A stretch of 64,000 nucleotides of DNA. Source: Octopus sinensis (taxonomy: Eukaryota). This document shows positions 1-49,040 of the stretch, in pieces. Where the stretch lies: contig NC_043024.1 of the NCBI RefSeq assembly GCF_006345805.1, positions 16,368,001 through 16,432,000 on the forward strand, given 5' to 3'. How positions within the stretch are numbered: position 1 is the stretch's first letter; each line of letters opens with the position of its first letter. Both the position numbers and the translations under genes were made by a program. The notes beneath the pieces were generated by a model, which worked only from the letters and a program-made list of their open reading frames with translations, was not told where the DNA came from and ran no database searches.

Positions 1-784
1 ATAGTGTTTACTCAGAATAACCCACGAAGGTATGGGGGTAAAAAACATTAAAAAATCACAAGTGCAAAGATTATTTGAGAACGTTACGTTTCTAGATCAG
101 CCAAATAAAATTCGACATTTCTTTCGTCAGCCCAAAATTTCTTAATTTGGATTTGGAAACACTGAAAGTAGGAACATACCCTTTTGGCGACTTAACACCT
201 CAGATGACCCGTTCAAACTGACAGTGCCAACAAATTCAAAATATGCAAGCGAAGAATTCCTGCTCTCCCCTTCCACCACGTGGGCTAAACTAGCAAACAC
301 CATATTTTAGCGGTGAAAACCAAGGCAATAAACAGAGAGAAATGAATTATAATTTCAACAATTGAGGGTAAAATTAATTAGTTATTAATCAATTTCACCA
401 AGTATTCAGTATGTAAAAGGACCATTTAAGGCGAATTCAAAATATTACATTATATAAAAGGGCTTAGTAAAATAAATTACTTTGCCACATACTGAACTCA
501 TTAGAAATAGCAGCCAAAAAAGTTTTTTTAGCTATTTCTAATACTTAAAGAAAATTTCTCTCAGATAGTGTTTACTCAGAATAACCCACGTAACGTTCTC
601 AAATAATCTTTGCACTTGTGATTTTTTAATGTTTTTTACCCCCATACCTTCGTGGGTTATTCTGAGTAAACACTATCTGAGAGAAATTTTCTTTAAGTAT
701 TAGAAATAGCTAAAAAAACTTTTTGGGCTGCTATTTCTAATGAGTTCAGTATGTGGCAAAGTAATTTATTTTACTAAGCCCTTT

Positions 785-792
<8 letters not shown>
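1..792. mobile_element. HHR-bearing non-coding tandem-unit element (period 564 bp, sense on minus strand) with an inverted short arm; runs off the window start
   Basis: 1-26 is repeated at 565-590. 589-676 is the exact reverse complement of 1-88. Arms 449-590 and 651-792 are inverted with 1 mismatch. The right end abuts (TA)n. Confidence 0.75.
74..136 (-). ncRNA. Type I hammerhead ribozyme core
   Basis: Minus strand reads tttggg CTGACGA a-aga...tct-a GAAAC g taa c GTT | ctcaaa. Stem I is 6 bp with one G.U; 10.1-11.1 is A.A. Confidence 0.65.
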
Positions 793-824
<32 letters not shown>

Positions 825-1093
825 CACATATATATATATATACATATACAAGATAAGAAAATGGAGAAATACATCAAAATCAAATATCAATTACCAGATA
901 ATACTCAATCACATACTTTATTAAACCACCACATAAGAGACTGTAGGGTTAAATATAAAAAGCAGAACAAATCAGTGTACATAAAGGAATGTACATAAAA
1001 AAGTGTACATAAAAGAGTAATGTTGTATAATAATTAGAATATATATAAAAAAGAATATAAATACAAGTAAGTATAAATATAAGTATAAATTAG

Positions 1094-1220
1094 ATCTTAC
1101 AGCTGTTTCGGCCATGTCGATAAGTATGTTTCATTTTACCAATATTGGCCCTTTATGGTTGGTCAATATATAGATATAAATGAGACATTAACAAAAATAT
1201 CACAAGGCCTCTTCGGAAAT
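1094..1220 (-). ncRNA. Type I hammerhead ribozyme, variant core (CCGAAGA), long stem II insert
   Basis: Minus strand reads attt CCGAAGA ggcc ...about 92 nt... ggcc GAAAC agct GTA | agat, with a palindromic stem III. It lies in an insert of about 940 bp between (TA)n tracts (about 850-1790). Confidence 0.55.
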
Positions 1221-1782
1221 TATGTAATATAACACAGTCTACACATATACCCACATGGGTGTGGGTGCGTACCCACAATACAACATATATATATATACGT
1301 ATGAGTGCATATAATCACACTCCTATACATATAAAAAAATATACATTTACATAATGATATAAATAAATAATATAAATTAGTAAACATATATATGTTCCAC
1401 ACCCAATGTCTCAGTTTTTCGACTTAATATTGTGATAATAAACATACACAAATTAATACCTAGATGCAAATATACATAGTCAATAGTACATTATATTACT
1501 TCATAATAGTTTCCAAAGTGTCATTAAAGTTAGTATCATTATCGTTGTCAATACAATTAATGTTATCATTGTTATCATTCATAATATTATTAATAACTCT
1601 TACATTATGATCCAGAGCAGAAATATGTATGTCCGTGTTCCAGTTAATAATTTTCCTTATGGCATAAATATACTATTGGATTGAATTTAAATTATCATTA
1701 TCTTCCTCACGGTTAGTCAATTGAGAACCGCCCAACCTCCACCACACCGTACAGGCAAAACATACACATCCACATCTAACCC

Positions 1783-1825
<43 letters not shown>

Positions 1826-1890
1826 GGTCCCGGGTTGAGTCGGGGTTAACCACAGTAAATAAGGTACTCAATACATAGCAGAGTAAATTA

Positions 1891-2025
1891 ATTTATTTTA
1901 TAGAAGGAGCTTCTACAGGACTAGAACTGTTTCATTCAAAAGAAATCATCAGGAGCCCAGACTTCCTGATGATTTCTTTTGAATGAAACAGTTCTAGTCC
2001 TGTAGAAGCTCCTTCTATAAAATAA

Positions 2026-2027: not shown

Positions 2028-2068
<41 letters not shown>

Positions 2069-4918: not shown

Positions 4919-5624
4919 TATATATATAGATATATAGATATAGATATATATAGATATATGTTCAGGTATGGTTTCTACAGCTAGATGCCCTACCTAATGC
5001 CAACTACTCCATAGAGTGTACTGAGAGCTTTTAATGTGGCACCAACACCAGTAGGTATCACTTCTGCAGGTGAAAATAAGTTGCTCTGATGATGAGAATG
5101 ATGATGACGATGATATATATATATATATATATATATATTTTCTATATATATAAAACTGAGAATGTGTGTGTGTATGTCTGTCTGTATGTTTGTGTGAATC
5201 CCTAAAACTTGAGAACTACACAAACAATTTCATTCAAATTTTACACATGCCTTACTTAGGGTCCATGTAGTGTCATGCGCATAAAAAACGTCTTGCCTAG
5301 GGCGAGCCCACAGCAATATCATATCTTCACTATTTCAGTATTACGTGTTAAAAGTGAAACAAAAACATCTCTTGATTGTAATGTCACATGCTTTCACTTT
5401 AATACCGAAACTAATAAAATGAAACTATTATATAACAGGGATGAACCATTAACAGTGGACATCCATTTTGCTAGAAGAAGATCCGCTATGGTCTTATATG
5501 CTACACCACTGGTTTTCAATTCATATTAATCAAATTAATATTCAATTTTTCACCCTTACTTACTTACATACATACATACATACATACATAGACACACACA
5601 CACACACACATACATACATATATA

Positions 5625-6224: not shown

Positions 6225-6813
6225 TACTGTTCTGTAATCGACTGATGCTTTGTTCTGGAGCATAAGTATATTGAATTCTAACACCAGGTTATTAGTATCA
6301 CTATGGCTTAGTGAAATAATAATAATACATACATACATACATATATATTATCAGGTAAGAGTTGTAAATTGTATTGTTCAAATATTATCTGATAGGGAAC
6401 TCAATACACTGTGTAAAGAAGATAGATATGTTTATGGCATCAAAAGTCAACATTTTATATACAGAGAGTTGAAATAGCAATATACAGATATAGAGATATT
6501 AATATACATAGATAGAGAGATGAACAACGGTATCTATATAGATATTGATATAAAAACAAATATATATATTGATATTGAGATAGATATTGATATCAATATT
6601 GATACAGACGTAGATGTAGACAAAGTTATCAATATAGATATATATATATATTGGTATATGGTTGAAAGAAATAGCAAACTGAAGAAAGAAGACAAAACCT
6701 GGAGCAGATGGGAAATGTTGAAATAGAGAACAGTGAATGGTCGGGAGAGGAAGCATTGTCTGTGGAAAAATGGGAGGATTATAATAATATCAAAAGGAAA
6801 TATTAACTATAAT

Positions 6814-7220
6814 AGGCGCAGGAGTGGCTGTGTGGTAAGTAGCTTGCTAACCAACCACATGGTTCCGGGTTCAGTCCCACTGCGTGGCACCTTTGGCAAG
6901 TGTCTTCTGCTATAGCCTCAGGCCGACCAAAGCCTTGTGAGTGGATTTGGTAGACGGAAACTGAAAGAAGCCTGTCGTATATATGTATATATATATATAT
7001 GTATGTGTATGTATATGTTTGTGTGTCTGTTTTTGTCCCCCTAGCATTGCTTGACAACCGATGCTGGTGTGTTTACATCCCCGTCACTTAGCGGTTCGGC
7101 AAAAGAGACCGATAGAATAAGTACTGGGCTTAAAAAGAATAAGTCCCGGGGTCAAGTTGCTCGACTAAAGGTGGTACTCCAGCATGGCCGCAGTCAAATG
7201 ACTGAAACAAGTAAAAGAGT
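6814..7220 (+). mobile_element. tRNA-derived SINE family A, full length
   Basis: A box-like TGGCTGTGTGG, B box-like GGTTCAGTCCC, CORE-like ccttggcaagtgtctt, internal TA/TG microsatellite, tail gactgaaacaagtaaaaga. Confidence 0.9.
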
Positions 7221-9215: not shown

Positions 9216-9520
9216 ATATTATTCGAGACAAAGCCACTATTTGCCAAAACAAAAAGGAAGACTTAATCAATACATAAAATTTAATAATAGTCAAAAAAAC
9301 CGCCACTACAATCGTTTCTTGTCTTGATCGACAATCTTCAGGGGACTCCAATATTCAGTGTAAATTAGACACTGAATTATTGGAAGTCCACCTGAAGATT
9401 GTCGATCAAGACAAGAAACGATTGTAGTGGCGGTTTTTTTGACTATTTATTAAAATTTTATGTATTGATTAAGTCTTTCCTTGTTTGTTTTGCAAATAGT
9501 GGCTTTGTCTCGAATAATAT
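9216..9520. repeat. Long imperfect inverted repeat (arms of about 146-152 bp, 7-nt loop)
   Basis: 9216-9361 vs 9369-9520, differing by a few small indels. The left copy extends to about 9125. Both outer ends lie in (TA)n. Confidence 0.9.
9388..9430 (+). ncRNA. Type I hammerhead ribozyme (mirror copy on minus strand, 9302-9344)
   Basis: ccac CTGAAGA ttgtc gatcaa gacaa GAAAC gatt GTA | gtgg; all core nucleotides and stems present. Confidence 0.85.
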
Positions 9521-10272: not shown

Positions 10273-10795
10273 TTATGTCTCTATTCTTCCATGCCATTCT
10301 TCTTCAATACCTCTGTTCTTCCATGTCTCTATTCTTCCATGTTTCTATTCTTCCATGTCTCTATCCTTCCATGCCCCTGTTTTTTCATGTCTCTATTCTT
10401 CCATGCCTCTATATTTCCATACCCCTATCCTTCCATGCTATTGTTCTTCCATGCCCCTATTCTTCCATACCCCTATCCTTCCATGCCCCTGTTTTTTCAT
10501 GTTCCTGTTCTTCCATGTCTCTGTTCTTCCATGCCCCTATTCTTCCATGCCTCTATTACTCCATGCTTCTGGTCTTCCATGCCTGTTCTCCTATATCACT
10601 GTTATTCCATGCCTCTATTCTTCTATGTCTCTATTCTTCCCTGTCTCTGTACTTCCATACATCTATTCTTCCATATCTCTGTTCTCCTATATCACTGTTA
10701 TTCCATGCCTCTATTCTTCTATGTCTCTGTTCTTCTATGTTCCTGTTCTTCAATACATCTATTCTCCTATGTGTCTATTCTTCCATGCCTCTATC
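10273..10795 (+). repeat. 16-bp minisatellite, consensus about ccatgcctctattctt, roughly 30 degenerate copies
   Basis: Repeated ttccatg spaced 16 nt apart; this explains the three overlapping long ORFs. Confidence 0.9.
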
Positions 10796-15778: not shown

Positions 15779-15953
15779 ACACACACACACACATATATGT
15801 ATATATATAAATTTAAAATAATAAGGGTTAAAAATTGAATATTAATTTGATTAATATCAATTTAAAACCAGTGGCCTGAAGATTCAGAAAAATTATATTA
15901 CATACATATAAAAGGGATGACTACGTAGTGGTCATCCCTCTTATATGTAAGTG

Positions 15954-16159: not shown

Positions 16160-16774
16160 TGCATGCGTGTGTGTGTGTGTATGTTTGTGTGTCTGTGTTT
16201 GTCCCCCTTCCGTTGTTTGACAACTGATGATGGTGTGTTAACGTCCCCGTAACCTAGTAGTTTGGTAAAAGAGACCGATAGAATAAGTACTAGGCTTACA
16301 AAAGAGTATAAAAGAATATATATATATATATATTCTTTTACTTGTTTCAGTCAAATGACTGTGGTCATGCTGGAGCACCACCTTTTTAGTGAAACAAATC
16401 AACCCCAGGACTTATTCTTTGTAAGCCTAGTACTTATTCTATCAGTCTCTTTTACCAAACTACTAGGTTACGGGGACGTTAACACACCAGCATCGCTTGT
16501 CAAGCGATGTTGGGGTGACAAACACAGACACACAAACATATGCACACACACACACACACACACATATATATACTTATATATATATGTATATATATATATA
16601 TATGATGGGCTTCTTTCAGTTTCCATCTACCAAATCCACTTACCCACTTACAAGGCTTTGGTCGGCCCAAGGCTATAATAGAAGACACTTGTCCAAGATG
16701 CCACACCGTGGGACTGAACCAGGAACCATGTGGTTGGTAAGCATGCTACTTACCACACAGCCACTCTTGCGCCT
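16160..16774. mobile_element. Two SINE family A copies tail to tail: plus-strand 3' half 16160-16305 and minus-strand full copy 16333-16774
   Basis: Similarity to the 6814 copy. Confidence 0.8.
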
Positions 16775-17217
16775 ACTATATATATATATTTTCCGAAATG
16801 TATAGTATTAAATATCCATCATGGTTGGTCTTACCAATTGGTTTCGTGTAAAAAATTCATTGCATTTTTTATGTGAAACCGATTGGTAAGACCAGCCATG
16901 ATGGATAATTAATACAATACATTCAGATAATATACACTCCCTACTGACAGATATACGAGTGCATCTTTTCGCTGACTTACAGTCTCTTAGACAACTCGTG
17001 TGAGTATATATATATATACCCATACATGTACACTCATACATGCACAAACGCACACACACACACGCACACATATATATACATGTCTATATATATATAGACA
17101 TGTATGTCTATATATATATATGTATATATATATATATCCATACACACACATATACATGCATAATCATATATGGAAGACAATTTTATGCCTGTCAAATCTG
17201 TTTGAGTTTGACAGGTG

Positions 17218-17645: not shown

Positions 17646-17950
17646 GTTGAACACAAAACTCTGATTACTTGAGTCACTAATGTAGCTTCTTGACTATTCT
17701 TTTCATTCTTTTATTTGTTTCAGTCATTTGACTGTGGTCATGCTGGAGCACCACCTTTTTAGTGAAACAAATCGGCCCCAGGACTTATTCTTTGTAAGCC
17801 TAGTACTTATTCTATTGGTCACTTTTGCTGAACCGCTAAATTACAGGGGATGTAAACACACCAACATTGGTTGTCAAGCGATGGTGGAGGGAGGGGTACG
17901 AACATATACATATACACATCCACACATATATATATAATATATATATATAT

Positions 17951-18605
17951 ATAATTAATTAATAAGGGTGAGAGAATTAGATACTAATTTAATAGTATAT
18001 CTATTCAACACCAAGTGGCCTAGTGCTCCGAGAACCTGGATTATTATAATATTTTTAATATATTATAATATTTTTACAAAATAAATATAGAGAGTGGTCA
18101 CTATATGGCTCACTCTAGCACCAGTTAATCCAAAAGGTTCACCACAAAGATACGTGTTTCCCATGAAAGTCAGTACGATTGTTAGCTCACACGGACAGGG
18201 CAAATAAAAAATAACAAAAATACAGATATTTTGGGACAATTGTTTCGCTATTAATGAATTAAATGTAATTTTACTTACAAAAAAATCCACTTGTAGCTCG
18301 TCAGCCAAAACTATCTGGATGAAATCCACTCAATCACACGCCAGATTTTACCATAACGATAAATACGCGTGTGGTTCAATTGATTACATCCGACGTTATA
18401 ATTCAAATGCCCCAACTAACAGCGCGCCAAACTTTCACGGAAAACAAATACTGCATTTAGAAATAAATGCAGCATAATTATAATTAATTAATAAGGGTGA
18501 GAGAATTAGATACTAATTTAATAGTATATCTATTCAACACCAAGTGGCCTAGTGCTCCGAGAAACCTGGATTATTATAATATTTTATAATATATTATAAT
18601 ATTTT
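17951..18605 (-). mobile_element. HHR-bearing element with terminal direct repeats of about 123 bp (period 529 bp)
   Basis: 17951-18074 is repeated at 18480-18605 (first 83 nt identical); (TA)n on both sides; no recognisable coding sequence. Confidence 0.85.
18229..18310 (-). ncRNA. Type I hammerhead ribozyme
   Basis: Minus strand reads ttttgg CTGACGA gcta...tagc GAAAC aatt GTC | ccaaaa. 6-bp stem I, G-C at 10.1-11.1, palindromic stem III. Confidence 0.9.
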
Positions 18606-20168: not shown

Positions 20169-20209
<41 letters not shown>

Positions 20210-20590
20210 TAATATTGAAATTATTGTATACAGTGCTCAGGTGCACCTCAACTTGTCAGAGTATATGCAGTAATGTAGAAATGTCTGGAAAGCGAACAGT
20301 GTATGAGTCAGATACATGCTTGCGTGTGTATGGAGGGGAGAAAATCAGGTGTAGTGTTGGCGAATCTCTCAGAAAGCATGGAAGTTTTGAAGGATGCAGT
20401 GCTCCGACAACTAACAACTGATGCCGGCAGTTTGTTCCATGCTTCAGCAACTCTCAGCGTGAAAAAATGTTTCCTAAAGTCATGGGAGCTGTGCTATTTT
20501 CTGACTTTGTAAATATGTCCACAGGTGTTAGACAGGTGGAGTTTGAAAAGGTGCTCAGAGTTATTGTCTGTAAGATGGTTAATAATTTAT
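20160..20590 (-). mobile_element. CR1-like LINE 3' end with (TAA)n tail
   Basis: Reverse complement of 23410-23855; encodes FFTLRVAEAWNKLPASVVSCRSTASFK. Confidence 0.7.
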
Positions 20591-27363: not shown

Positions 27364-27597
27364 ATATATATATATATATATAATATATATATATATATTA
27401 GTGAATTGAAGAAATGGAGTTGAACGAAGATTGAACAGAAATCCTTTTATTGCATTCTACATGTGTTTCGAAAGCCACAATTTACCAAATTCCGATTGAA
27501 TAAGGAGCCCATATTGTGTCTTTCTCTTCAGGAAGAAATAGGAATTCCGTTGGCAGAACAAAAACAGAACAGAGGCGCAGCAAAACAAATCGAACGA

Positions 27598-27909
27598 GGG
27601 GCCTCATCGTCAAAGTTGGCCTTACGAATCTCCAACCATTACGCAACTTTTCGCGACGTGAATAAATTCCAAGCCACAGGACTTAGCAAGCTAATATGGC
27701 GATTGAAGAATACGAACTCAAGCTACAGGCTGGAATGGTCAATTTTGTCGGTGGCCCTCCCATTTGATAGGGGCAGAAGGAAGTGCAACCTTTGTGTCTC
27801 TGAGCTTTTCCATATATTGTTCGCCACAGACCGGATGGTAAACGGTCTTTTACAGTCGGCTTTTCGATGCCCCCATTGGCGGCGTTATACTTATCTTGCT
27901 TATAAATGA
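27598..27909 (+). pseudogene. C-terminal half of a Penelope-like GIY-YIG endonuclease (open frame, 5'-truncated)
   Basis: GASSSKLALRISNHYATF...TGLSKLIWRLK...LEWSILSVALPF...KCNLCVSELFHIL...CPH matches the recalled PLE endonuclease pattern (YIG..., T-x-LSK-x-IW-x-LK, I-x-W-x-I, C-x-LC, C-x-H). Confidence 0.75.
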
Positions 27910-28485
27910 TGCTTATAAATGATACCTGCACCCGGTTACCCTGCTTATATGAGAATAGCCCTTGGAAATAATGTTTTGAAAAAGCTTTTTAAGATAGATA
28001 TGATTAACCCTTGCAAGGGGAATTACTCCCATTAGGCGAATGGTGTTTTGTTTCGACGACGTGAGTTTTGTTTTGACAAAGCATGATTAGACGAACACAC
28101 GAACACATAAAATATTTTCTGCCGCCTGACGGATTTTTCAGCAGTGACCATTGTGTAGCGCTTTTTACCAACTTACGGCCGCGCACATATAGAACAGTTC
28201 ACACACACGTTTCTAAGTAGATTTTGTCTCGCCCCATATAATACACCTAATATTCTTAGAATAGTCAGAACCTTAGTCTCGGTCACAAAGAACATCTACG
28301 CACCCCGTGCCCTCACCCTCCGGATTGACCGCTGCCTGACCTGTAAATATCTTCAACACACCCACCACCCCATTTCAACATACATTGATAAACAGTTTGG
28401 CCATGGGCTCTTAGGAGCCTCCTCGTTCGATTTGTTTTGCTGCGCCTCTGTTCTGTTTTTGTTCTGCCAACGGAATTCCTATTTC

Positions 28486-28565
28486 TTCCTGAAGAGAAAG
28501 ACACAATATGGGCTCCTTATTCAATCGGAATTTGGTAAATTGTGGCTTTCGAAACACGTGTAGAA
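28486..28565 (+). ncRNA. Type I hammerhead ribozyme (mirror copy on minus strand, 27455-27534)
   Basis: ttc CTGAAGA gaaag a cacaat...attgtg g ctttc GAAAC acgt GTA | gaa. Confidence 0.8.
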
Positions 28566-28763
28566 TGCAATAAAAGGATTTCTGTTCAATCTTCGTTCAA
28601 CTCCATTTCTTCAATTCACTAATAATATTAAAATTCAATTATCCACACCAACGCACGGTTGCAACACCATATGGTTGTACCTCCAACCGTGCTTTCTTCT
28701 GCTGTGATTTTTGCTACCAAGGTATCGGTTAAACTTTTGATTAATCTGCACAAGATTATTCAT

Positions 28764-30050: not shown

Positions 30051-30069
30051 TATATATATATATATCAGA

Positions 30070-30134
30070 CCATGCTGACGAGGTTACAGTTTATCCTTGC
30101 GGATAATAATAACCGAAACTGATTCAGTACATGG
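30070..30134 (+). ncRNA. Type I hammerhead ribozyme
   Basis: ccatg CTGACGA ggtta...taacc GAAAC tga t tca GTA | catgg; canonical core and all stems paired. In an insert of about 325 bp (30065-30390) between (TA)n tracts. Confidence 0.9.
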
Positions 30135-30381
30135 GTAATTATTTTATTTCGTATATTTTCATTTGTCTTGTTTAATGCTTTGGTTTTGTGCTGAGTTTTA
30201 TTTGAGAACATACTCTTTGTGGAGAATGGTGATTTGACATCTATATCTAGCATGTTGACTGTCCACTTTTCGTGTTCAGTCCTTAATTGGTATATATAAA
30301 TATTTTAATCTTCGGATTCATTTTAATATGCTAGACCACTGCTTTTAATTGACTAATATCAATTTCTACCCTTAATCAATT

Positions 30382-30435
<54 letters not shown>

Positions 30436-30439
<4 letters not shown>

Positions 30440-30760
30440 GTCATTAAAAATGGTGGTGGAGTTTTTGTTTTCATTTCTGTAGCTAGTACTCTGTCAGATT
30501 CTAATACTCCTAGATACTTATAACTCTCTTCTCCTTTCAATGATTTTATTGTCTGGCCATCTGGTAATTGGATGCTTTCACTGTTGACTACCTGCCCACT
30601 TCTCATGACTAATATTGCACACTTATCTATGCTAAATTCCACACCTATATCTCTGCTGAAGAGTCTTACAGTTTGTATTAAGGAATCTATCTCATTTTTA
30701 TTCTTACTAAAAAGCTTCAAATCATCCATGTAGAGCAAATGGTCAATAGAGAAAGAACCG
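30436..30760 (-). pseudogene. Non-LTR retrotransposon RT fragment (R4/Dong-like)
   Basis: LYMDDLKLFSKN...DIGVEFSIDKCAIL...YKYLGVLE. Confidence 0.85.
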
Positions 30761-31639
30761 GTTCCTAACCTAGATCCAAGGCTCCTTCATTGGAATTTCA
30801 ACATCAACAACAGGGTATTTTTGTTGTATGTATGTATGTATGCATGCATGCATGCATGTATGCGCAGATTTGTATGTTTTGTTTTATGTATGTCTTCTCA
30901 TGCATAAACTTGTCACATTTTACTGTTTCTCCTGCATTTCTGTCCCTTTTGTGCATCAGGTATTTCCTGTTCCTGGATGCTAATGCATACCCTTCAAAAT
31001 GTATGTAGGTCAGTAGGTAGGTATGCATATGGTAATCTGTAACTCTTTATATCTCACTTAAGATAGATGTCTTGTCAGAACACCAAATACTTTATTATTA
31101 GCATTGAGAGATCCTCTTAAACAGGCCCTTTTATGCAGCGAGCACCTTTATATAGGCACTTTTATGCACATTTAGTTGGATATAAAAATTAGCATTTGAT
31201 ACTGCTTCCATTGCTAATAATTAATATATATACATCTATATCTATGTAATTAAAGCCAAATGAAGGCTATTATTCTAAAATAAGGCTAAGGCTAACATTG
31301 GGACATACACCAGGTCAGGAGATTTAATACTAAGCACAAACTTCAATTTATTATAAATTTCGTGTTGATTGGGACAGCTTCTTAAATAATTCCTAGTTAA
31401 CACAATTTATAATATCTCTGTTATTTCTGCCAATATGAATGTTTCTCTTTCTCTCTCTTTTTTCTCTCTTTTTCTGTCTGTCAGTCTGAAGAAGAAGGGG
31501 GAGGAGGAGAAGGAATTGAGAGAAAATGATAGCTAAGGGGAGAAGAAATGTAATGTGGAGCTAATCGGAGTAAAAAAAAGATGTGAAATCTTAATGGTCA
31601 ATAAATCTAATGAATATTGACTGAAATGAAAGGTGTGTA

Positions 31640-32572: not shown

Positions 32573-32578
<6 letters not shown>

Positions 32579-33138
32579 GTTAAAAAAATTCCCTCTTATA
32601 TTTATGTATGAAATACTATTTACTGAACCTCAGTTTTTTTATATGCTAGACCACTGGTGTTAAAATTGATGTTATCAAATTAATATCCAATTTTTCACCC
32701 TGATTTTGATTTTGATTTAAAATTAATACGTTCTCAAACCGGTGAAAACTACTGCAGTGAATTATTTATGCAGTATTTATTTCTGGTAATTTAGTGTGCC
32801 TAAACGAAGACTTTTGAAAATAACCGCAAATGTAATAGGTAGAACTACATGCATTTTCAACCTCGTGTTGATATCTGAAGTGAAGTTCTGCAAATTATAT
32901 TCTGCATAGACGATCATACTGATGATCTACAGATATATTGTGTAAGTAGAATTACGTAATTTATTGATAGTGAAACAATTGTTTATGATTAATTGATATT
33001 TTTGTTACTTTTCATTTGTCTTGCTCGCTTACATTTCTGGTGTGTTACATTTTCTGGAGAACAATTCTTAGTGGTTGAGACCATAACGGATCTTCTTCTA
33101 GCATAAGGGTTTCCACATAGTGGTTAAAAAAATTCCCT

Positions 33139-33145
<7 letters not shown>
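32573..33145 (+). mobile_element. HHR-bearing element with 29-bp terminal direct repeats (period 544 bp)
   Basis: atagtggttaaaaaaattccctcttatat at 32573-32601 and 33117-33145; (TA)n on both sides. Confidence 0.85.
32914..32988 (+). ncRNA. Type I hammerhead ribozyme
   Basis: tcata CTGATGA t-cta...tag-t GAAAC aatt GTT | tatga; 10.1-11.1 is U.U. Confidence 0.8.
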
Positions 33146-33177
<32 letters not shown>

Positions 33178-36792: not shown

Positions 36793-37016
36793 TCATTTCA
36801 TATAAGATCCACCTGCTTTCTATTTCTCTTACTACCACCCTCATCACTTGGCCCCTTCTGGCTCATCTCAAAACCTATAACTAGGTAGCAACATTGGACC
36901 TACTGTGCACAGTACACTCTCATCCTCCCCTCCTGTACTGCCTGTCATCACCCTGTCATGATTACATTTAGTATATCTCATAATATTGACTACCATTATC
37001 ACTCATTCGCCCCTAA

Positions 37017-37350
37017 CACTCATTCCTCCCATCACTCATTCCCACTATCACTCATTCCCCCTATCGATCATTTTCCCTATCACTCATTCCCCCTATCGTT
37101 CATCTCCCCTATCACTCATTCCTCCTATCACACAATTTCCCTATCACTGGTTCCCCATCACTCATTCCCCCTATTGCTTATTCTCCCTATCACTCATTTC
37201 CTCTATTGCTCATTCACCCTCTCACTCATTTCCCCTATCGCTCATCCCCTTATCACTCATTCCCACTATCACTCATTCTCCCCATCACTCATTCCTCCAT
37301 ATCACACATCCCCTAACACTGATCCACCTATCACATATTCACCCCCTCCC
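37017..37350 (+). repeat. 16-bp minisatellite, consensus about cactcattccccctat
   Basis: About 20 degenerate copies, directly visible. Confidence 0.85.
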
Positions 37351-38582: not shown

Positions 38583-38903
38583 CCCCCAACATCGCTTGAC
38601 AATCGATGGTGGTGTGTTTACATCCCTGTAACTTAGCGGTTCAGCAAAAGAGACCGATAGAATAAGAATTTGCTTGACTATAGGTTGTGCTCCAGCATGG
38701 CCACAGGAGTGGCTGTGTGGTAAGTAGCTTGCTTACCAACCACATGGTTCCAGGTTCAGTCTCACTGTGTGGCACCTTGGGCAAGTGTCTTCTACTATAG
38801 CCTCGGGCCGACCAAAGCCTTGTGAGTGGACTTGGTAGACAGAAACTGAAAGAAGCCCATTGTATATATATGTATATATATATATGTATGTGTGTATGTG
38901 TTT

Positions 38904-38946
<43 letters not shown>

Positions 38947-39122
38947 TGCCTGTCCCCCCAACATCGCTGGTGTGTTTACATACCCGTAACTTAGCAGTTC
39001 GGCAAAAGAAACCGATAGAATAAGTACAAGGCTTACAAAGAATAGGTCCTGGGGTCGATTTGCTTGACTAAAAGCGCTGCTCCAGCATGGCCGCAATCAA
39101 ATGACTGAAACAAGTAAAAGGG
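38400..39122 (+). mobile_element. Two head-to-tail SINE family A copies (about 38400-38703 and 38704-39122)
   Basis: The first copy's tail ccagcatggcc runs directly into the second head caggagtggctgtgtgg. Confidence 0.85.
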
Positions 39123-39399
39123 TAAAAGAGTATTCATACACATGTTGTCTATAGCTGGTTCCCTTCACAAGCACAGACATGACAACTGACACTTTTTTGC
39201 AAATTGAGTTAAATCAATTTTCAGCTTTTCAAATTATCTCTGGAGTCAGAGACAGAAACCCTGCTTTGATAAATCCCTTCCTGTCAGCATGGTTTCAGAT
39301 ATAACTGAAAGATCTTTATATATGCATATGACTGTGTGTATGTATGGGCGATTGGGTGCGTGATGCATGCATGTGTATGTATGCATATGTGCATGTATG

Positions 39400-39673
39400 T
39401 GTGCGTGGACATATATATAAATGCATATATATATATATATATAATATATATTATATATATATATGTGTGTGTGTGTATATATATATATGCATATATATAT
39501 ATACATATATATACATATATATACATATATATACATATATATATATATACATACATATATATACATATATATATATTATAGACATATAATACATATACAA
39601 TATACATATATATATATACATTACATATATATATATATACATACATATACATACATATATATAATATACATAC

Positions 39674-39712
<39 letters not shown>

Positions 39713-40616
39713 CATACATATACATATATATATATATACATACATATACATATATATATATATACATACATATACATATATATATATACATACATATACA
39801 TATATATATATATACATACATATACATATATATATATATACATACATATACATATTATATATATATACATACATATACATATATATATACATACATATAC
39901 AAATATATATATATACATACATATACATATATATATATATCATACATATACATATATATATATACATACATATACATATAATATATATACATACATATAC
40001 ATATATATATATATACATACATATACATATATATATATATACATACATATACATATATATATATACATATACATATATATATATATACATACATATACAT
40101 ATATATTATATATACATACATATACATATATATATATACATACATATACATATATATATACATACATATACATATATATATATATATACATACATATACA
40201 TATATATATATACATATACATATATATATATACATACATATACATATATATATATATACATACATATATATATATATATACATACATATATATATATATA
40301 TACATACATATATATATATATATACATACATATATATATATATAATACATATATATATACATACATATATATATATATACATACATAGATATATATATAT
40401 ATACATACATACATATATATATACATACATATTATATATATTATACATACATACATATATATATATACAGACACACATATATATATATATACATACAATA
40501 TATATATATATCTACATACATATGTATATATATACATACATAGATATAGATATATACATACATATATATATACTATATAATATATATATACATATATATA
40601 TTATATATACATACAT

Positions 40617-40685
<69 letters not shown>

Positions 40686-41680
40686 GCAGATATATATATA
40701 TATATACATACACACACACACACACACACACACATATATGTATGTATTTATATATCTCTTATTATAATATATATATAAATACATACATATATATAATTTA
40801 TATATATAAATGCATATATATATACACACACATATACACACATATATGTATGTATGTATGTATATGAGTATGTATGTATATGTGTGTGTGTGTGAGTGTT
40901 TGAATGTTTATGCATTTATGTGTTTCAAAGTACATATAAGATATAAGAAAATTTCATTTGATGAAGTTGAGTTTCTGATATTATTCAAAGCAGAAGATCA
41001 GATGCGTCTTTGATTGCCTATTTTCATTTCTCATGTGATTAAGTAAATAAATATATTTATACATACTTACATATATGTAAGTGTTCATGTGGGTGTGTGA
41101 GCATGCGTGTGTATGTGTGCAAGCATGTGTGTATATGTATGTATATATGTGTGTACATATGCATATATATATATGTATATATGCATATATATATGTATAT
41201 ATATGCATATATATGCATATATATATATGCAAATATATGCATATATATATATATGCAAATATATGCATATATATGCATATATACATACATATATATATAT
41301 ATATGCATATATACATACATATATATATATGCATATATAAATACATATATATATGCATATATATGCATATACATATATATGTATGTATATGCATATATAT
41401 ATGTATATATATATATATACATATATAGAGAGACTGATTGACATACAGATGCATAATTATATTGGTAAGTAAGAACATATTGAGAGAAATTGTTATATTG
41501 TTAGGTAAGCTTGGTAGGTGTGTTTGTATATATATATATGTATGTATATGTCTATATGTATGTATGTTTGGGTGTAAGTAGGTATATAGTGAGTGAGGGT
41601 TAGATAAATAAATGCACGTGCGTAAAGAATTTCAGTGTGTCTGAGCTGATGTTTGATTGTACATACACACACACACGCAT

Positions 41681-41712
<32 letters not shown>

Positions 41713-42087
41713 TGTCTTCATTTTATGAGACTCTTTTTGTTTTCATTATCAAAGCATCTCTTCGACAATGACTACAATACCAGAAATCTTTCTGTCTCTA
41801 TGTGTGTGTGTGTATGTCTACCTATGCATGTATATATATGTGCATGTATATAGATATACGTATATATATATTTTTATATACACACACACATTTATATACA
41901 TATAATATATATATATATGTATCTATATATATATACATACATATATATGTATGTATATATATATATATATATATATACGTAAATATATATATATGTATAT
42001 GTGTGTGTGTATACATACATATATGTATATGTGTGTGTATATACATACATATATGTATATGTGTGTGTATATACATACATATATATG

Positions 42088-42122
<35 letters not shown>

Positions 42123-42140
42123 GTAAATATATATATATGT

Positions 42141-42203
<63 letters not shown>

Positions 42204-42248
42204 GTGTATATATATATATATATGTATATATATGTATATATATATATA

Positions 42249-42287
<39 letters not shown>

Positions 42288-42302
42288 ATATATATATATA
42301 TA

Positions 42303-42333
<31 letters not shown>

Positions 42334-42390
42334 TATATATATACGTAAATATATATATGTATATGTGTGTGTATATATATATATATGAGA
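39400..42390. repeat. About 3-kb alternating purine-pyrimidine satellite region (TA, CATATA/CATA, TGCATA, TATG blocks) with short unique interruptions
   Basis: Directly visible; source of all long Y/I/M/C-rich ORFs. Confidence 0.95.
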
Positions 42391-43649: not shown

Positions 43650-43878
43650 TGGTTTGTCATGAGGTTCTATGGCGTTGTGGTTATCACACTTGCTTTACAA
43701 GCAGAAGATTGTGAGTTCCATCCTTGCCAGAACCATTGACTTTAACCTTTTATCCAATCCATACCACCATAGACAATGGATGTTAAATGGTGATGATGAT
43801 GTTGTATCTATATACAACTACTGATATATATATTTACGTCTTGGACTTCCTGTACCTCTACAGTAATTTGAATTCTTA

Positions 43879-44927: not shown

Positions 44928-46861
44928 CTCCCTCATAAAAGATATATATTAGTGACAGCAGCAGCATTATTGTTGAGAGATTATATTTATCTCTAACAAG
45001 GATGCTCTGTTGGAACAAATTATATTACAGCAGACACCATAATAAAAATTCTCATATTGGCTTTTGGTGCAAAATGCACTCTCAGTATTAAAACTGCCTC
45101 TGTTGATACTATATATTTTTTAACAAACTCGCTGGCTAATCACAACATCAGTGACTGCTCTGGCATTGTTATTTTATATATCAATGGTGGGGAGATAAAA
45201 TGCTGCTATTTCTAGCAGCCAAGTATCCATCATTAGGGCTAGTCCAAGGAATTTTTTGAAGGAAGGGCACAAGGTCAGAAGGGAATACAATTCCAAGAGA
45301 AAAGGGGATAAACACATTATTTAGAAGGGTGTACTTCTTTTCTTGGGGGAGGGAACGTGCCTCTCAGAGCCCATCCCCTGTGTCCACCCCTGATCATTAA
45401 AACTAAAGTAGGTCAAAATTACATGATATGGTGGTTGCAGTGTTGGAGGTGGCAAGGATTTGTCTGTCCGTTAGTGATATAAACAAGCGTGCATTTTGCA
45501 CCAAAAGCCAACATGAGTTGTTTCTCTCATGGTATCTACTGCCGTATAGTTTGTTCTAATAGAACATCCATGTTTAAGTGGGGATAAATATAACCATCTT
45601 ATTAAAATGTCATAAAAACCTCAACAAAAGGTGCTGCATGAACAGACTTCAGTACTATGAAGTCTGTTCAATTTCTTGAAGGCATTAGGGTAGAAGATAA
45701 AACTTGGATTCAATACAACTGCCAGCATTCCCAGCAGTAGAGGGACAAAGACGAAATACCAAAGAGAAATCCCCGAGTACTTTCCCCAAGCTGAACCAGA
45801 ATCAAAAGGCGATGGTCTCTGTTTGGTGATTAGTATGTAATATCATCTATTACTAGATCCTATTTCTTAGTGAAACTATTACAACAGAGAAATATCTTTA
45901 AGAAAGAACAGAAAAGGTTAGATTGGGAATTGATCAAAAGACAAATTCTTTTTTATGACAATTCTTTTTTATGACAATTCTTTTTTATGACCTTTTGTCT
46001 TGTAAATGACTCTTTAGAAATTAAACAGCCAGGGACAAGAAACTCTCTCTCCCACCCAGCTTACTTCCTACATCTTACTCCAGTTGGTTATTACATTTTC
46101 AAGTCTCTCAATAGGTTCTGACTAGTATAAGGATATTTTTAATGACCAAACCATAACTCAAACACCTGTGGAAAATGCATTGGTTTCATGTCTATAGATA
46201 ACAATGTTACTGAAATAAATAGCTTTATTTCTTGTTGATAAAAATAGGAATGAATTTCAATGAATATCATTTCAAATAATAAAATTTATTCCAAGCATGT
46301 GTGTGTGGTGGGTAGTTGAAAGTTAAAAAGCACAATTATTTTTGTCCCAATCTGTATATTGTGTATATACACTTATTGATTGTGAGTTTGTGTTTCCGTG
46401 TGTCCATGTGTATGTACAATATATATGTTTGAGTATATACGTAAATACATTCAGTATGTGAATGGATTATTAATAATGAAATACTGACACTTAATTAAAG
46501 AATATTTAAATCTAAGTGTGTGTGTATATGTGTGTGTATGCACACACATGCAATATTATCTAGAAGTATTACTAAAAGACACTTAATTAAAACATACTTC
46601 TTTGTATATACAGGTGTACACACACACACACAAGCAACTCTATATTTTGGGGACACAAATGGGAGAAAAAGTTACCAGTGAAAATAGGTTATTCATTTGA
46701 AGCTGGAGGTTCATGTTGCTTACTCAGAGTGTCTTGTCAGCTGTGATCACATTTAATAAAATAAAATCTCAAAAGCAATGGCATGAATCATAGTTGCTTG
46801 AATTGTATATATTTGGTCCAGCATGGCCACAGCCTTAAGGCTGAAACATAAAATAATAAAA

Positions 46862-46900
<39 letters not shown>

Positions 46901-46979
46901 CATATATATACACACACAGATATTGTTGTTTAGGGAGAGTCATTATGCCAATATAATACATTTAAAAACATACATACAC

Positions 46980-47124
46980 ACACAACTGGTACTTAATTTA
47001 TCGAACCTGAAAGGATGAAAGGCAAAGTTGACCATGGTGGAATTCGAACTCAGAACATAAAGACAGACGAAATAACGCTAAGCATTTCGTCCAGCGTGCT
47101 AACGTTTCTGCCAGCTCACTGCCT
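46980..47124 (-). mobile_element. SINE family C
   Basis: Similarity to the 31925 copy. Confidence 0.75.
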
Positions 47125-47560
47125 TCTTTTCATCTTGATAACCTTTTGTAACTGCCACAGTAATTTGGAATAGTATTCTCCATTGATAGTGGGGCCCTTT
47201 TGAAGGTAATCAATAAATACGATGCTTTTTGCATCCCCCAAAACCGAAACCATCACCTTCTCCACAGATGAAACAACCTTGGACGTCTTTGGAGCAGGTG
47301 AAGAGGGGTGTTGGATCCACTGCATGGTTGTCTATGTGTCTATGGCTCAAAGTGATGAACCTAACATGCGTTCTGAGTTGGGAAACATTCAAAGAAAACA
47401 GTTGGATCTACCTCAAGCAATGTCAGCTTTTTCTCTGATGTGCACCCACTGAGCAAAAACCATTGCCATGACAAGTTCATTGTACAGAATATTCTCAACT
47501 CCCTCATGGGATAGGCTTGTAACATTGGCTATTTGATTTATAATCAATCACCTGTCCTTG
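47125..47560 (-). pseudogene. Mariner transposase fragment
   Basis: SSPAPKTSKVVSSVEKVMVSVLGDAKSIVFIDYLQKGPTINGEYYSKLL resembles the mariner segment KVMATVFWD...IDYL.KG.TI.G.YY..LL. Confidence 0.8.
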
Positions 47561-47688
47561 TTCACCATGTGGTTTGCTTCTCAGCCACATGGTTTTGAGG
47601 CTGTCCTAGAACAAAGCATGGCATGTTTATGTATATACATACATATCCACACACACACACATATGTATGTGTATATGTATGTATGTAT

Positions 47689-47724
<36 letters not shown>

Positions 47725-49040
47725 ATAACAAAGGTAAAATTAATTAATTAAGAAGTAATCAGTAATTTCACCAAGCAGAATTCGGCATGAAAAAGGCCAT
47801 TTCATGGTAAGCTTAAGTAATACTTTATAAATAGGGTTACTGAACCCTATTTATATATGTATTTATATATGTGTGTGTGTATGAGTGTGCGTGCGTATCG
47901 TTTGTGTGTGTATATTTATAATTGAACAGTTTTCAACAAGTGAGGAAAAAAACACACTCTAAAAGAAAATTTTGGCAGTTATATTTTATATAGTCAAGAA
48001 GTATACTTTTGGATATTAGTGAAAGCCCCAAAACTCTGCACAGAGGCAAGATGTTCATGTAGGGTTAACAGCAAGTGCCAGTAGATGGTTGATGCAACAC
48101 TGAGGCCATGGTTTATGAAGCAGAAGTGGTGTCCAACTATAACAACAGCAGCAACATTGTAAGCACACACACACACACATGTTGGAGTAATGGAAGGCCC
48201 CTTTAAGACTAGGCTAAATAACCACATGCTTCCTTTTAGGATCCCAGAGAAGTATCATGTTACAACATTGTTCACTTATATTTGGTGATTAAAAGATGAG
48301 GGAATACTGTACAGAATTAACTGGAAGCTACTGGAACAATCTGTGTCGTGCCTCAACAGAAGCAGATGGTGAAAATTTTGCTTGGCTGAGACTGCAATGA
48401 TCAAAAAAAAAAAAAGAAATTCACATGATCTGGTTGTATTCTTGAGCTCAAAAAAAATGAAACTTTTAGTTGGTACCCTCATGACAGAAAATGTGTTTTG
48501 AAAATGTAGCCTTCCCTGTTTGCATACTAGTGAACAAAAAACAACCATGAACCGATTCATTTCAGACATAGCTGGAATCATTCAAGAGAAGGTAACCGTC
48601 CCTCTCAGAATGGGTTTCTTTTGGGTCAGGGTTTTTTTGTTTTTTTAACTATCAGACTGATGAGAAATGTGTTTTTATCTCCATTTCTAAAAAGGCTGCA
48701 ATTTCTGTCCAGCAGATCTGATGAACCATCTACAACACTGAGTATAATAGTAGACACGAAACTCTGATTGGCCATAACCAAGGATATCCTATTCAACTAC
48801 ATAATATGTGTGTGTGCATGCGTGTGTATATGTGTGTGTGTGTGTCTCATTGAGTGATAGTTGTAAATGAGTGTTACTGTCATTCATTTCCAATATTCTG
48901 TGGAAAGGGTGGTGGTAGGGGTGTAGGTTTGACTCAGTAAACTCCATTTAACCCATGGAGCCATGAATAATTGGATAATAAAGATGATGATGTTGATATA
49001 TATATACAAAAAATATATGCAAATATATATTATGTGTAGA

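What the first reader, a model, noticed from the sequence alone, without database searches (positions are those of the whole stretch)
365..47774. Shared YTGGT-(AT hairpin)-ACCCT stem-loop just upstream of element 3' junctions
Seen on the element sense strand at 365-401(-), 5509-5556(+), 15824-15871(-), 17965-18014(-) and its repeat near 18494, 30339-30372(+, GCT variant), 32654-32701(+) and 47731-47774(-, ACCTT). The inner sequence and length differ, but it stays self-complementary and is closed by GGT/ACC. In five cases (5556, 15824, 17965, 30372, 47731) the junction with the microsatellite follows within about 20 nt. Inference: a structure-conserved cis signal for RT recognition or target priming, shared by otherwise divergent families.
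Basis: partly seen in the sequence, partly recalled or inferred. Interest (0 to 1): 0.75.

Follow-up and report, generated by a model that had tools for sequence, protein, structure and literature searches.

The report
Octopus Penelope-type retroelement tail hairpin
A small AU-rich hairpin recurs near the ends of short, ribozyme-carrying "Penelope-like" jumping-gene copies in an octopus genome; it most likely marks where their reverse transcriptase starts copying, which is a known kind of signal seen here in a new form.

Summary
All eight stem-loops are at the stated coordinates. A ninth copy lies in an Octopus vulgaris locus. Six of seven distinct window sequences fold with a GGU(K)/(M)ACC closing stem; F does not, and B only weakly.

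The carriers are not independent families. They form one superfamily of non-coding elements with a hammerhead-ribozyme (HHR) consensus, and they are built like Penelope-like elements (PLEs) or animal retrozymes:
- partial tandem units of 529-565 bp;
- inverted 5' arms;
- variable 5' truncation;
- insertion into (TA)n or (TACA)n microsatellites.

The hairpin lies 207-260 nt 3' of the predicted HHR cut. Six copies end 10-16 nt after it.

A second box (CCCTYTTAT), 80-106 nt upstream, resembles the post-hairpin ACCCTTATTA. It forms the outer end of the inverted arms and of one permuted unit. The hairpin therefore sits inside a PLE-type "tail", between two apparent cDNA start sites.

This parallels the Anolis Poseidon element, where reverse transcription starts internally at two sites around a stem-loop downstream of the HHR (PMC11167929).

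Stem arms co-vary, and the sense strand folds better than the antisense. The sample is small, Rfam calls no HHR, and no autonomous octopus PLE could be examined. I rate it a new variant of a known kind, of moderate interest.

The parts
366..400 (-). Hairpin A (family 1). Internal: the sequence reads on into the next unit.
   Evidence: (z -6.3).
5510..5555 (+). Hairpin B (family 2, decayed stem). The tail TTACTTACTTAC runs into (TACA)n.
15825..15870 (-). Hairpin C (family 2). A 15-nt tail is followed by (TA)n/(GT)n.
   Evidence: (z -3.5).
17966..18013 (-). Hairpin D (family 3). Terminal copy: tail TTATTAATTAATTA, then (TA)n.
18495..18542 (-). Hairpin E. Same insertion as D, one 529-bp period upstream. 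Here the same tail is followed by the 5' region of the unit.
   Evidence: (98.4% over 127 nt).
30341..30371 (+). Hairpin F (family 4, outer stem lost). A 16-nt tail is followed by (TA)27.
   Evidence: E=0.018.
32655..32700 (+). Hairpin G (family 2). Internal to a permuted unit.
   Evidence: (z -3.3).
47733..47773 (-). Hairpin H (family 1, ACCTT variant). A 10-nt tail is followed by (TA)n. It is 91% identical to the O. vulgaris copy L002:1628-1741.
   Evidence: (z -5.0).
18228..18311 (-). Type-I hammerhead consensus between E and D: CUGACGA, helix II GCUA/UAGC, GAAA, palindromic helix III ACAAUUGU, predicted cut after GUC, helix I 7-10 bp. It lies 215 nt upstream of hairpin D.
   Evidence: z -4.3. 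Not called by Rfam.
30070..30134 (+). Type-I hammerhead consensus, 207 nt upstream of hairpin F. The F insertion starts at its helix I.
   Evidence: Not called by Rfam.
32913..32989 (+). Hammerhead-like motif of the G unit, homologous to the E-D motif. Helix I is changed on both strands (AUCAUA/UAUGAU against UUUUGG/CCAAAA). The first helix II pair is U/U.
69..140 (-). Degenerate hammerhead-like motif of the A locus: CUGACGA ... GAAAC, helix I 6 bp, helix II closing pair A/A.
   Evidence: read by eye.
1..787 (-). A locus. The minus-strand copy runs from 590 to beyond the window start. An inverted plus-strand arm (591-787) ends at the CCCTTTTAT box and then (TA)n. Positions 442-800 form an 87.6% palindrome.
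5430..5568 (+). B insertion. An inverted arm of about 65 nt, ending at the box at 5432-5440(-), is joined about 15 nt upstream of hairpin B.
15810..15950 (-). C insertion. Inverted box 15936-15944(+), 16-nt fold-back arms, direct box 15908-15916(-), linker, hairpin, tail. Microsatellite on both flanks.
17950..18605 (-). E-D insertion: 1.3 units of a 529-bp unit (PLE pLTR-like partial tandem), flanked by (TA)n on both sides.
30066..30390 (+). F insertion, from the HHR to the tail. (TA)nTCAG is present on both flanks, like a target-site duplication.
32576..33143 (+). G insertion: one circularly permuted unit. It starts 20 nt before the box (32591-32599) and ends just after the same box (33135-33143). 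It has a 29-nt terminal direct repeat at 100% identity (37 nt at 94.6%), with (TA)n outside both ends.
47724..47857 (-). H insertion. Inverted box 47845-47854(+), 13-nt fold-back arms, direct box 47827-47836(-), linker, hairpin, tail.

Best explanation
The stem-loop is the structured core of the "tail" of a superfamily of non-autonomous, hammerhead-bearing, Penelope-like (retrozyme-type) retroelements in Octopus.

A unit of about 530-600 nt reads as follows:
1. predicted HHR cut;
2. about 150-190 nt of body;
3. the CCCTYTTAT box, followed by a TA-rich run (site 2);
4. a linker of about 55 nt ending in GRCCACU;
5. the hairpin, closed by GGUK/MACC;
6. CCUUAUUA-type AU-rich tail of 10-16 nt (site 1);
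7. about 170-280 nt leading to the next HHR.

The steps below are inferred by analogy with the purified Anolis Poseidon element. A PLE reverse transcriptase/GIY-YIG endonuclease supplied in trans binds this region of a multimeric or circular transcript. It cuts both strands of a (TA)n or other AT-rich target. It starts cDNA synthesis internally in the RNA, either just 3' of the hairpin (site 1) or at the upstream box (site 2).

What the sequence shows directly:
- The right ends are fixed while the 5' ends vary.
- Some insertions are longer than one unit, or are a permuted unit.
- Inverted 5' arms have outer ends always at site 2.
- The hairpin-containing segment of 80-106 nt (measured between the two CCCT motifs) is therefore present at one end of an insertion only. 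This is the PLE "tail" signature.

The hairpin would act as an RNA-level recognition or positioning element for the RT.
For: Architecture:
- HHR consensus on the same strand, 207-215 nt upstream of hairpins D and F. Four consensus hits were found against 0.155 expected per Markov-shuffled window; two strict hits against 0.01.
- The E-D and G hammerheads are homologous, with helix I changed on both strands.
- A 529-bp partial tandem.
- A permuted G unit with a 29-nt terminal direct repeat (100% identity; 37 nt at 94.6%).
- An inverted arm in the A locus and short fold-backs in B, C and H that end exactly at the CCCTYTTAT box facing the microsatellite.
- 3' ends 10-16 nt after the hairpin in B, C, D, F, H and the O. 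vulgaris copy, while in E exactly the same tail reads on into the unit. This indicates internal initiation.
- (TA)n on both flanks, and a (TA)nTCAG duplication around F.
- A microsatellite within 30 nt downstream in 5 of 8 copies, P about 3e-5.

Structure:
- Cognate arms fold at -11.2 kcal/mol and swapped arms at -6.2; only 2 of 28 chimeras fold as well as the cognates.
- 82.8% of cells are paired against 75.4% in shuffles (0 of 1000 reach the observed value). Five pairs carry a compensatory change against 2.2 expected (19 of 1000 reach it).
- The sense strand is more stable than the antisense in 6 of 6 intact copies, with 7 G-U pairs.

Literature:
- PAc cuts both strands of AT-rich DNA and starts RT at two internal sites around a stem-loop 55-90 nt 3' of the HHR cut. 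The tail is the sequence between these sites (PMC11167929).
- PLE pLTRs, inverted 5'-truncated copies, a tail at one end, (TA)n preference, and non-autonomous elements that share 3' ends with autonomous ones (PMC8557442).
- A palindromic helix III in PLE hammerheads (PMC4209133).
- Animal retrozymes as derivatives of PLE pLTRs (PMC7229834; bioRxiv 10.64898/2026.07.22.740005).
Against: - No autonomous PLE is in the window or in 87 kb of other Octopus loci (tblastn with the Poseidon_Ac protein). A shared tail with an RT-encoding partner is therefore untested.
- Rfam covariance models call no hammerhead here, even at E<=10 on short stretches. The HHR call rests on a consensus script and reading by eye. 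The helix II inserts are unusually long, and two of the four motifs have a non-canonical 10.1-11.1 pair.
- There are only nine copies, about four or five lineages, all related. The covariation statistics are modest, and relatedness can inflate them.
- B, D and F fold no better than many shuffles.
- Site 2 has no hairpin next to it, so the shared CCCTYTTAT box, and not the hairpin, could be the real determinant.
- AU-rich palindromes arise easily in AT-rich DNA.
- Units of 530-600 nt are larger than the 150-450 bp reported for animal retrozymes, and no long tandem arrays are seen.
Confidence: 0.6

Rival explanations
1. The sequence box is the signal and the hairpin is a passenger. On this view the RT start is set by the CCCUYUUAU + AU-rich motif present at both sites, perhaps by pairing with the (TA)n primer. 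The hairpin is only a conserved, palindromic piece of the tail with another role or none.
For: Both kinds of outer end carry CCCT(Y)TTAT followed by AT-rich sequence. Site 2 works without an adjacent hairpin (A plus-strand arm; inverted arms of B, C and H; G unit). The tails resemble their flanking repeats (TTAC/TACA in B, TA-rich elsewhere).
Against: Stem arms co-vary, and the sense strand keeps G-U pairs. This is not expected for a passenger. [quoted passage not shown]
Confidence: 0.15
2. The palindrome acts as double-stranded DNA. It would be a recognition site for the PLE GIY-YIG endonuclease that directs new insertions next to old copies and so generates tandems.
For: The D. virilis Penelope tail was reported to be needed for endonuclease recognition, as cited in PMC11167929. 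Partial tandems and inverted arms are frequent here.
Against: There is a strong strand asymmetry. The antisense strand folds 1.3-8.3 kcal/mol worse in the six intact copies, and G-U pairs occur on the sense strand only. Most copies sit in ordinary (TA)n, not beside another copy.
Confidence: 0.1
3. The hairpin is the 3' stem-loop of SINE-like or truncated LINE copies of the "stringent" type (as in the eel UnaL2/UnaSINE1 pair; L2, CR1 and RTE clades). A LINE RT would recognise the stem-loop and the terminal short repeats.
For: Fixed 3' end, variable 5' truncation, and a stem-loop followed by simple repeats. LINE RT fragments occur in the window at 30439-30786 and 52775-53059.
Against: The flanking repeats differ between copies and lie on both sides, so they belong to the target and not to the element. 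A hammerhead consensus, partial tandems, a permuted unit and inverted arms with a defined outer end are PLE traits, not LINE traits. The LINE fragments lie on other strands and share no sequence with the elements.
Confidence: 0.08
4. The hairpin is the 3' terminal hairpin of non-autonomous Helitron or Helentron (DINE-1-like) rolling-circle transposons, which insert at AT or TT sites.
For: A hairpin 10-16 nt from the 3' end, AT-rich targets, a TA-rich internal run and tandem ends.
Against: There is no 5'-TC or 3'-CTRR terminus. The 5' ends vary. A duplication resembling a target-site duplication surrounds F. G-U pairs are confined to the sense strand. A hammerhead consensus is present.
Confidence: 0.04
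5. There is no function. The resemblance is inherited sequence in decaying copies of one old repeat, and the hairpin is a chance AT-rich palindrome.
For: Primary sequence similarity is significant across B, C, D, F and G and between A and H. B and F have lost pairing.
Against: The hairpin region is the best-conserved part of otherwise diverged elements. Arms changed on both sides keep pairing. The position relative to the 3' ends is fixed.
Confidence: 0.03

Closest known systems
The "tail" and internal RT-initiation stem-loop of the Poseidon PLE of Anolis carolinensis (PAc; Frangieh et al. 2024, PMC11167929)
   Same: It lies 3' of the hammerhead. It marks the 3' ends of genomic copies. There are two alternative start sites, and the tail lies between them. 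Targets are AT-rich, both target strands are used, and the template is longer than one unit.
   Different: - PAc has a short AC-rich stem-loop with initiation inside it. Here there is a 14-18-bp AU-rich hairpin with a GGU/ACC clamp, and the ends fall 10-16 nt downstream.
- The tail is about 34 nt in PAc, against 80-106 nt here.
- The distance from the HHR cut is 55-90 nt in PAc, against 207-260 nt here.
- PAc is autonomous and its site lies inside the ORF; the octopus elements are non-coding.
- There is no sequence similarity (reading of the Poseidon_Ac sequence).
Animal non-LTR retrozymes (Cervera and de la Pena 2020, PMC7229834; Li et al. 2026 preprint, 10.64898/2026.07.22.740005)
   Same: Non-coding, AT-rich, a type-I hammerhead, head-to-tail repeats, a proposed circular RNA template, and derivation from PLE pLTRs.
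   Different: Units here are 530-600 nt, against 150-450 nt. Copies are mostly single, truncated or 1-1.3 units, not long arrays. No conserved start-site hairpin or two-site tail has been described for retrozymes in the papers read.
Naiad and other EN+ PLEs (Craig et al. 2021, PMC8557442)
   Same: Preference for (TA)n microsatellites, pLTRs, an inverted 5'-truncated copy, and a tail at one end.
   Different: Naiads lack canonical hammerheads. The clade of the octopus partner is unknown.
3' stem-loops of stringent-type LINE/SINE pairs (eel UnaL2/UnaSINE1; from my own knowledge)
   Same: It works in a similar way: a conserved 3' stem-loop next to short repeats is recognised by the RT and shared with non-autonomous partners.
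   Different: This is a different retroelement class. It has no hammerhead, no inverted arms, and its repeats belong to the element.

Membership tests
Penelope-like element derivative / animal non-LTR retrozyme | Type-I hammerhead motif (CUGANGA ... GAAA ... UH, open helix I) on the element's sense strand | tested here: inconclusive
   The full consensus is present at 18228-18311(-) and 30070-30134(+). Homologous but degenerate motifs lie at 32913-32989(+) and 69-140(-). Four hits were found against 0.155 expected. Rfam hammerhead models give no match, and self-cleavage was not assayed.
Penelope-like element derivative / animal non-LTR retrozyme | Partial head-to-tail tandem (pseudo-LTR), or copies longer than one unit | tested here: met
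   E-D has a 529-bp period over 1.3 units. G is a permuted unit with a 29-nt terminal direct repeat (100% identity; 37 nt at 94.6%). The A locus reads through into a second unit.
Penelope-like element derivative / animal non-LTR retrozyme | An inverted 5'-truncated copy abutting the 5' end | tested here: met
   The A locus at 442-800 is an 87.6% palindrome. Fold-back arms of 65, 16 and 13 nt are present in B, C and H.
Penelope-like element derivative / animal non-LTR retrozyme | [quoted passage not shown] | tested here: met
   Direct arms end after the hairpin. Inverted arms end at the CCCTYTTAT box 80-106 nt upstream. That these are RT start sites is an inference.
Penelope-like element derivative / animal non-LTR retrozyme | AT-rich or (TA)n insertion sites with duplications of variable length | tested here: met
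   (TA)n or (TACA)n is present at the ends of B, C, D/E, F, G, H and the L002 copy.
Penelope-like element derivative / animal non-LTR retrozyme | 3' end or pLTR shared with an autonomous PLE encoding RT + GIY-YIG | not testable with these tools
   No PLE ORF is in the window or in L001-L005. No eukaryotic genome collection can be searched by DNA.
Stringent-type LINE/SINE 3' tail | The terminal short tandem repeat is part of the element and the same in all copies | tested here: not met
   The repeats differ between copies ((TACA)n in B; (TA)n in D, F and H; none in A, E and G) and occur on both flanks.
Stringent-type LINE/SINE 3' tail | A partner LINE carries the same 3' stem-loop | not testable with these tools
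   The LINE RT fragments in the window are unrelated in sequence and strand.
Helitron / Helentron non-autonomous element | 5'-TC and 3'-CTRR termini (Helitron) or subterminal inverted repeats with a TT target (Helentron); no target duplication | tested here: not met
   The ends are ...TTAATTA...TTTATAA and ...GTTATTA. The 5' ends vary. (TA)nTCAG is duplicated around F.

The most novel reading that the evidence does not exclude
The hairpin with its two CCCUYUUAU boxes (about 100-130 nt in all) is a self-contained, structure-defined initiation module for a cephalopod PLE reverse transcriptase. It would fix two internal cDNA start sites on circular or multimeric ribozyme-processed RNA and couple them to both cut strands of a (TA)n target. 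This would give comparative, in vivo support for the two-site, double-strand priming model so far shown only in vitro for one lizard element, and it would define a minimal portable cis-element for PLE-mediated insertion.
Probability: 0.35. Interest if true: 0.6.

Novelty: new variant of a known kind. Interest (0 to 1): 0.42.

Why it matters
How Penelope-like elements and the retrozymes that depend on them are copied into DNA is still poorly known. The only biochemical study (2024) found internal initiation at two sites around a stem-loop in one lizard element.

If the octopus hairpin and box module is the equivalent signal, two things follow:
- The principle holds across phyla and in non-autonomous elements.
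- The cis-element is small, and its co-varying stem can be tested directly with compensatory mutants.

It would also explain why these elements pile up in (TA)n microsatellites, and why their copies look like fold-backs and partial tandems that confuse repeat annotation in cephalopod genomes.

Tried and rejected
- Rfam at gathering and E-value thresholds, on the whole window and on the two best HHR stretches. It gave only a tRNA-like hit and microsatellite noise, and no hammerhead.
- ARAGORN found no tRNA.
- Attempts to collect more copies:
  - A protein search with a LINE RT fragment returned only non-octopus eukaryotes, and locus L001 shares no DNA with the window.
  - A window ORF was not on record.
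  - A SINE-derived peptide gave one O. vulgaris protein and locus L002.
  - A zinc-finger query returned mostly vertebrate proteins. It gave only O. sinensis, O. vulgaris and O. bimaculoides loci L003-L005, which hold no copy.
- Two metagenome scans. An exact 27-mer found nothing. A degenerate clamp pattern found five GC-rich bacterial chance matches that do not form the hairpin.
- tblastn with the published Poseidon_Ac protein found no PLE coding remnant.
- MAFFT alignments of all families were not structural. I therefore used model-fitted alignments and an alignment-free arm-swap test. The tool count included an antisense row, which inflates compensatory counts; I recounted without it.
- Rejected explanations: Helitron, LINE-tail and no-function (see the rival explanations).
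- Weak covariance-model hits at 35706, 39187, 44086 and 20194, and at L002:18901, do not have the motif.

Full report
**Setting.** The window is AT-rich (about 36% G+C), and 11-15% of it is microsatellite. It is full of copies of a SINE-like repeat of about 400 bp. A peptide read from that repeat matches only an Octopus vulgaris protein. An O. vulgaris locus (L002) shares the repeats at 80-91% identity. The window therefore comes from an Octopus or a close relative. The exact species was not determined.

**The observation.**
- Each folds as a hairpin. In A, C, D, G and H it is closed by GGU(K)/(M)ACC. B keeps only a weak outer stem, and F has lost its outer stem.
- Energy z-scores range from -6.3 (A) and -5.0 (H) to about -1 for the visibly decayed copies B and F.
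- Two covariance models recover these copies and nothing else convincing in the window.
- One more copy, 91% identical to H, lies in O. vulgaris locus L002 at 1693-1732, with (TA)n on both sides.
- About 66 kb from O. sinensis, O. vulgaris and O. bimaculoides (L003-L005) hold none.
- The microsatellite junction follows within 10-16 nt in B, C, D, F and H. By TRF at score >=30, a microsatellite lies within 30 nt downstream in 5 of 8 copies (B, D, F, G, H), against 5.9% background, P about 3e-5. At score >=50 it is 3 of 8, P about 1e-3.

**What the carriers are.** The resemblance does not stop at the hairpin.
- B, C, D, E, F and G share GRCCACU(U)GGU before the stem and ACCCUUA after it.
- A, C, G and H share a CCCTYTTAT box 80-106 nt upstream.
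- The hairpin is not always terminal. After E the sequence runs on for 400 nt to a second copy, D, giving a 529-bp period. That stretch is homologous to the stretch after G.
- This stretch contains a complete type-I hammerhead consensus at 18228-18311(-): CUGACGA, helix II closed by GCUA/UAGC, GAAA, a palindromic helix III (ACAAUUGU), a predicted cut after GUC, and a 7-10-bp helix I.
- The G unit has the homologous motif, with helix I changed on both strands: AUCAUA/UAUGAU in place of UUUUGG/CCAAAA.
- A third full consensus lies at 30070-30134(+), 207 nt upstream of F. This compares with 215 nt for D.
- A simple consensus script finds four such motifs in the window, against 0.155 expected in Markov-shuffled sequence.
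- A short palindromic helix III is the trait described for PLE and other animal hammerheads, which act as dimers (PMC4209133).
- Caveat: Rfam's hammerhead models do not match these motifs at any threshold. This may be because helix II carries 30-50-nt inserts. No cleavage data exist.

**Insertion anatomy.** Reading each copy end to end gives one consistent picture.
1. Six copies (B, C, D, F, H and the L002 copy) stop 10-16 nt after the hairpin, in an AU-rich tail. Examples are TTATTAATTAATTA, TTATTATTTTAAATT, TTAATCAATTTTATAA and TTTGTTATTA.
2. Their 5' ends fall at different points of the unit, which is the hallmark of copying from the 3' end.
3. In E the identical tail is followed by the 5' region of the unit. 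The stop in D therefore corresponds to an internal point of a longer template.
4. Four insertions carry an inverted arm at their 5' side: about 190 nt in the A locus, about 65 nt in B, 16 nt in C and 13 nt in H. The outer end of every inverted arm is the CCCTYTTAT box, facing the flanking microsatellite.
5. The G insertion (32576-33143) is one circularly permuted unit. It starts 20 nt before the box and ends just after the same box. The resulting terminal direct repeat is 29 nt at 100% identity (37 nt at 94.6%). This is what copying round a circular or tandem template from the box would give.
6. The box (UCCCUYUUAUAU) and the post-hairpin sequence (ACCCUUAUUA) resemble each other.

There thus appear to be two end-forming sites. 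Site 1 is just after the hairpin and site 2 is at the box. The linker and hairpin between them are present at one end of an insertion only. The flanks are (TA)n on both sides. Around F, (TA)nTCAG is duplicated.

**Comparison with known biology.** These are the published signatures of Penelope-like elements:
- pseudo-LTRs from partial tandems;
- an inverted 5'-truncated copy;
- a "tail" at one end;
- AT-rich or (TA)n targets;
- non-autonomous relatives that share 3' ends (PMC8557442).

The one biochemical study used purified Poseidon_Ac protein. It found that both target strands are cut and extended, and that reverse transcription starts inside the RNA at two nearby sites around a stem-loop 55-90 nt downstream of the hammerhead cut. 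The genomic tail is the sequence between those sites (PMC11167929).

Animal retrozymes are now viewed as non-autonomous derivatives of PLE pLTRs (PMC7229834; preprint 10.64898/2026.07.22.740005). The octopus elements fit this class. They have no ORF and no similarity to the Poseidon protein. I found no description of a conserved start-site hairpin in retrozymes or cephalopod PLEs in the papers read.

**Is the structure selected?**
- The stems differ between families while pairing is kept.
  - The fourth pair of the outer stem is G-C in G and D, U-A in C, and G-U in A, H and the L002 copy.
  - The middle stem of D differs from that of C at two pairs on both sides.
  - The apical stems are unrelated in sequence.
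- An alignment-free arm swap gives -11.2 kcal/mol for cognate arms against -6.2 for chimeras. Only 2 of 28 chimeras, both within the A/H family, fold as well as the cognates.
- On a model-fitted alignment of six distinct sequences, 82.8% of cells pair against 75.4% in shuffles (0 of 1000 reach the observed value). Five pairs carry a compensatory change against 2.2 (19 of 1000). The tool count is higher, but it included an antisense row.
- The sense strand folds better than the antisense in all six intact copies and holds seven G-U pairs. This favours a signal read in the RNA and not in duplex DNA.
- These tests rest on few, related sequences and should be read as suggestive.

**Verdict.** The claim that the families are otherwise divergent is overstated. 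The hairpin is also only one part of a two-site tail module, and its box motif may matter as much.

Confidence in the best explanation is 0.6. The main gaps are the missing autonomous partner, the small sample and the lack of Rfam support for the hammerheads.

Noticed in passing
window 9228-9512: An inverted dimer of about 120 bp per arm, flanked by TA-rich sequence and (TA)n. Its plus-strand arm carries a compact hammerhead-like motif at 9388-9430 (CUGAAGA ... GAAA ... UA, helix I 4 bp). It has no GGU/ACC hairpin. Dual minimal hammerheads on opposite strands are described for PLEs (PMC4209133).
   Followed up: partly
window 22145-22243 (-): A fourth hammerhead-consensus hit with a long G+C-richer helix II. 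It is not next to any hairpin copy and may be chance or another family.
   Followed up: no
window 43663-43735 (+): A tRNA match in Rfam (36.8 bits, above the gathering score), but ARAGORN calls no tRNA. It is possibly a tRNA pseudogene or a SINE head.
   Followed up: no
window 6812-7220 and about 20 further copies (e.g. 16331-16775, 38704-39134, 51202-51599, 54209-54596): An abundant SINE-like repeat of about 400 bp. Copies are 70-90% identical to each other and 80-91% identical to copies in O. vulgaris locus L002. One copy is annotated as a hypothetical protein in O. vulgaris.
   Followed up: partly
window 39411-42386: A degenerate (AT)n tract of about 3 kb (G+C about 20%).
   Followed up: no
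window 30439-30786 (-) and 52775-53059 (-): Fragments of LINE reverse transcriptase (Pfam RVT_1). The best database relatives are 62% identical and come from non-octopus eukaryote assemblies. The F insertion sits in the (TA)n that abuts the first fragment.
   Followed up: partly
window 27391-27605 and 28415-28628: A 215-bp inverted repeat at 98% identity, about 800 bp apart, perhaps the terminal inverted repeats of a DNA transposon. A second inverted pair (20185-20589 / 23440-23854, 88.5% identity) encloses about 2.9 kb.
   Followed up: no
window 60092-60920 and 63181-64000: A direct duplication of at least 829 bp at 92% identity, cut by the window end. Nearby are 42-bp tandem repeats at 59895-60089 and 61582-61798.
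   Followed up: no
window 10275-10794 and 36997-37334: Two arrays of 16-bp tandem repeats (CTATTCTTCCATGCCC about 32 times; TATCACTCATTCCCCC about 21 times) that create long spurious ORFs.
   Followed up: no
L006 12914-12966, L008 1445-1497, L009 3986-4038 (metagenome contigs): The degenerate clamp pattern hit a nearly identical G+C-rich 53-nt sequence in three bacterial-looking contigs. It forms two short hairpins and is probably a conserved bacterial RNA or repeat, unrelated to the octopus motif.
   Followed up: no
window 779-848 and 33135-33177: In two places the CCCTYTTAT box is followed directly by a long (TA)n and then by unrelated sequence. I read these as ends formed at site 2. Expansion of the element's own TA-rich run followed by rearrangement cannot be excluded.
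   Followed up: partly
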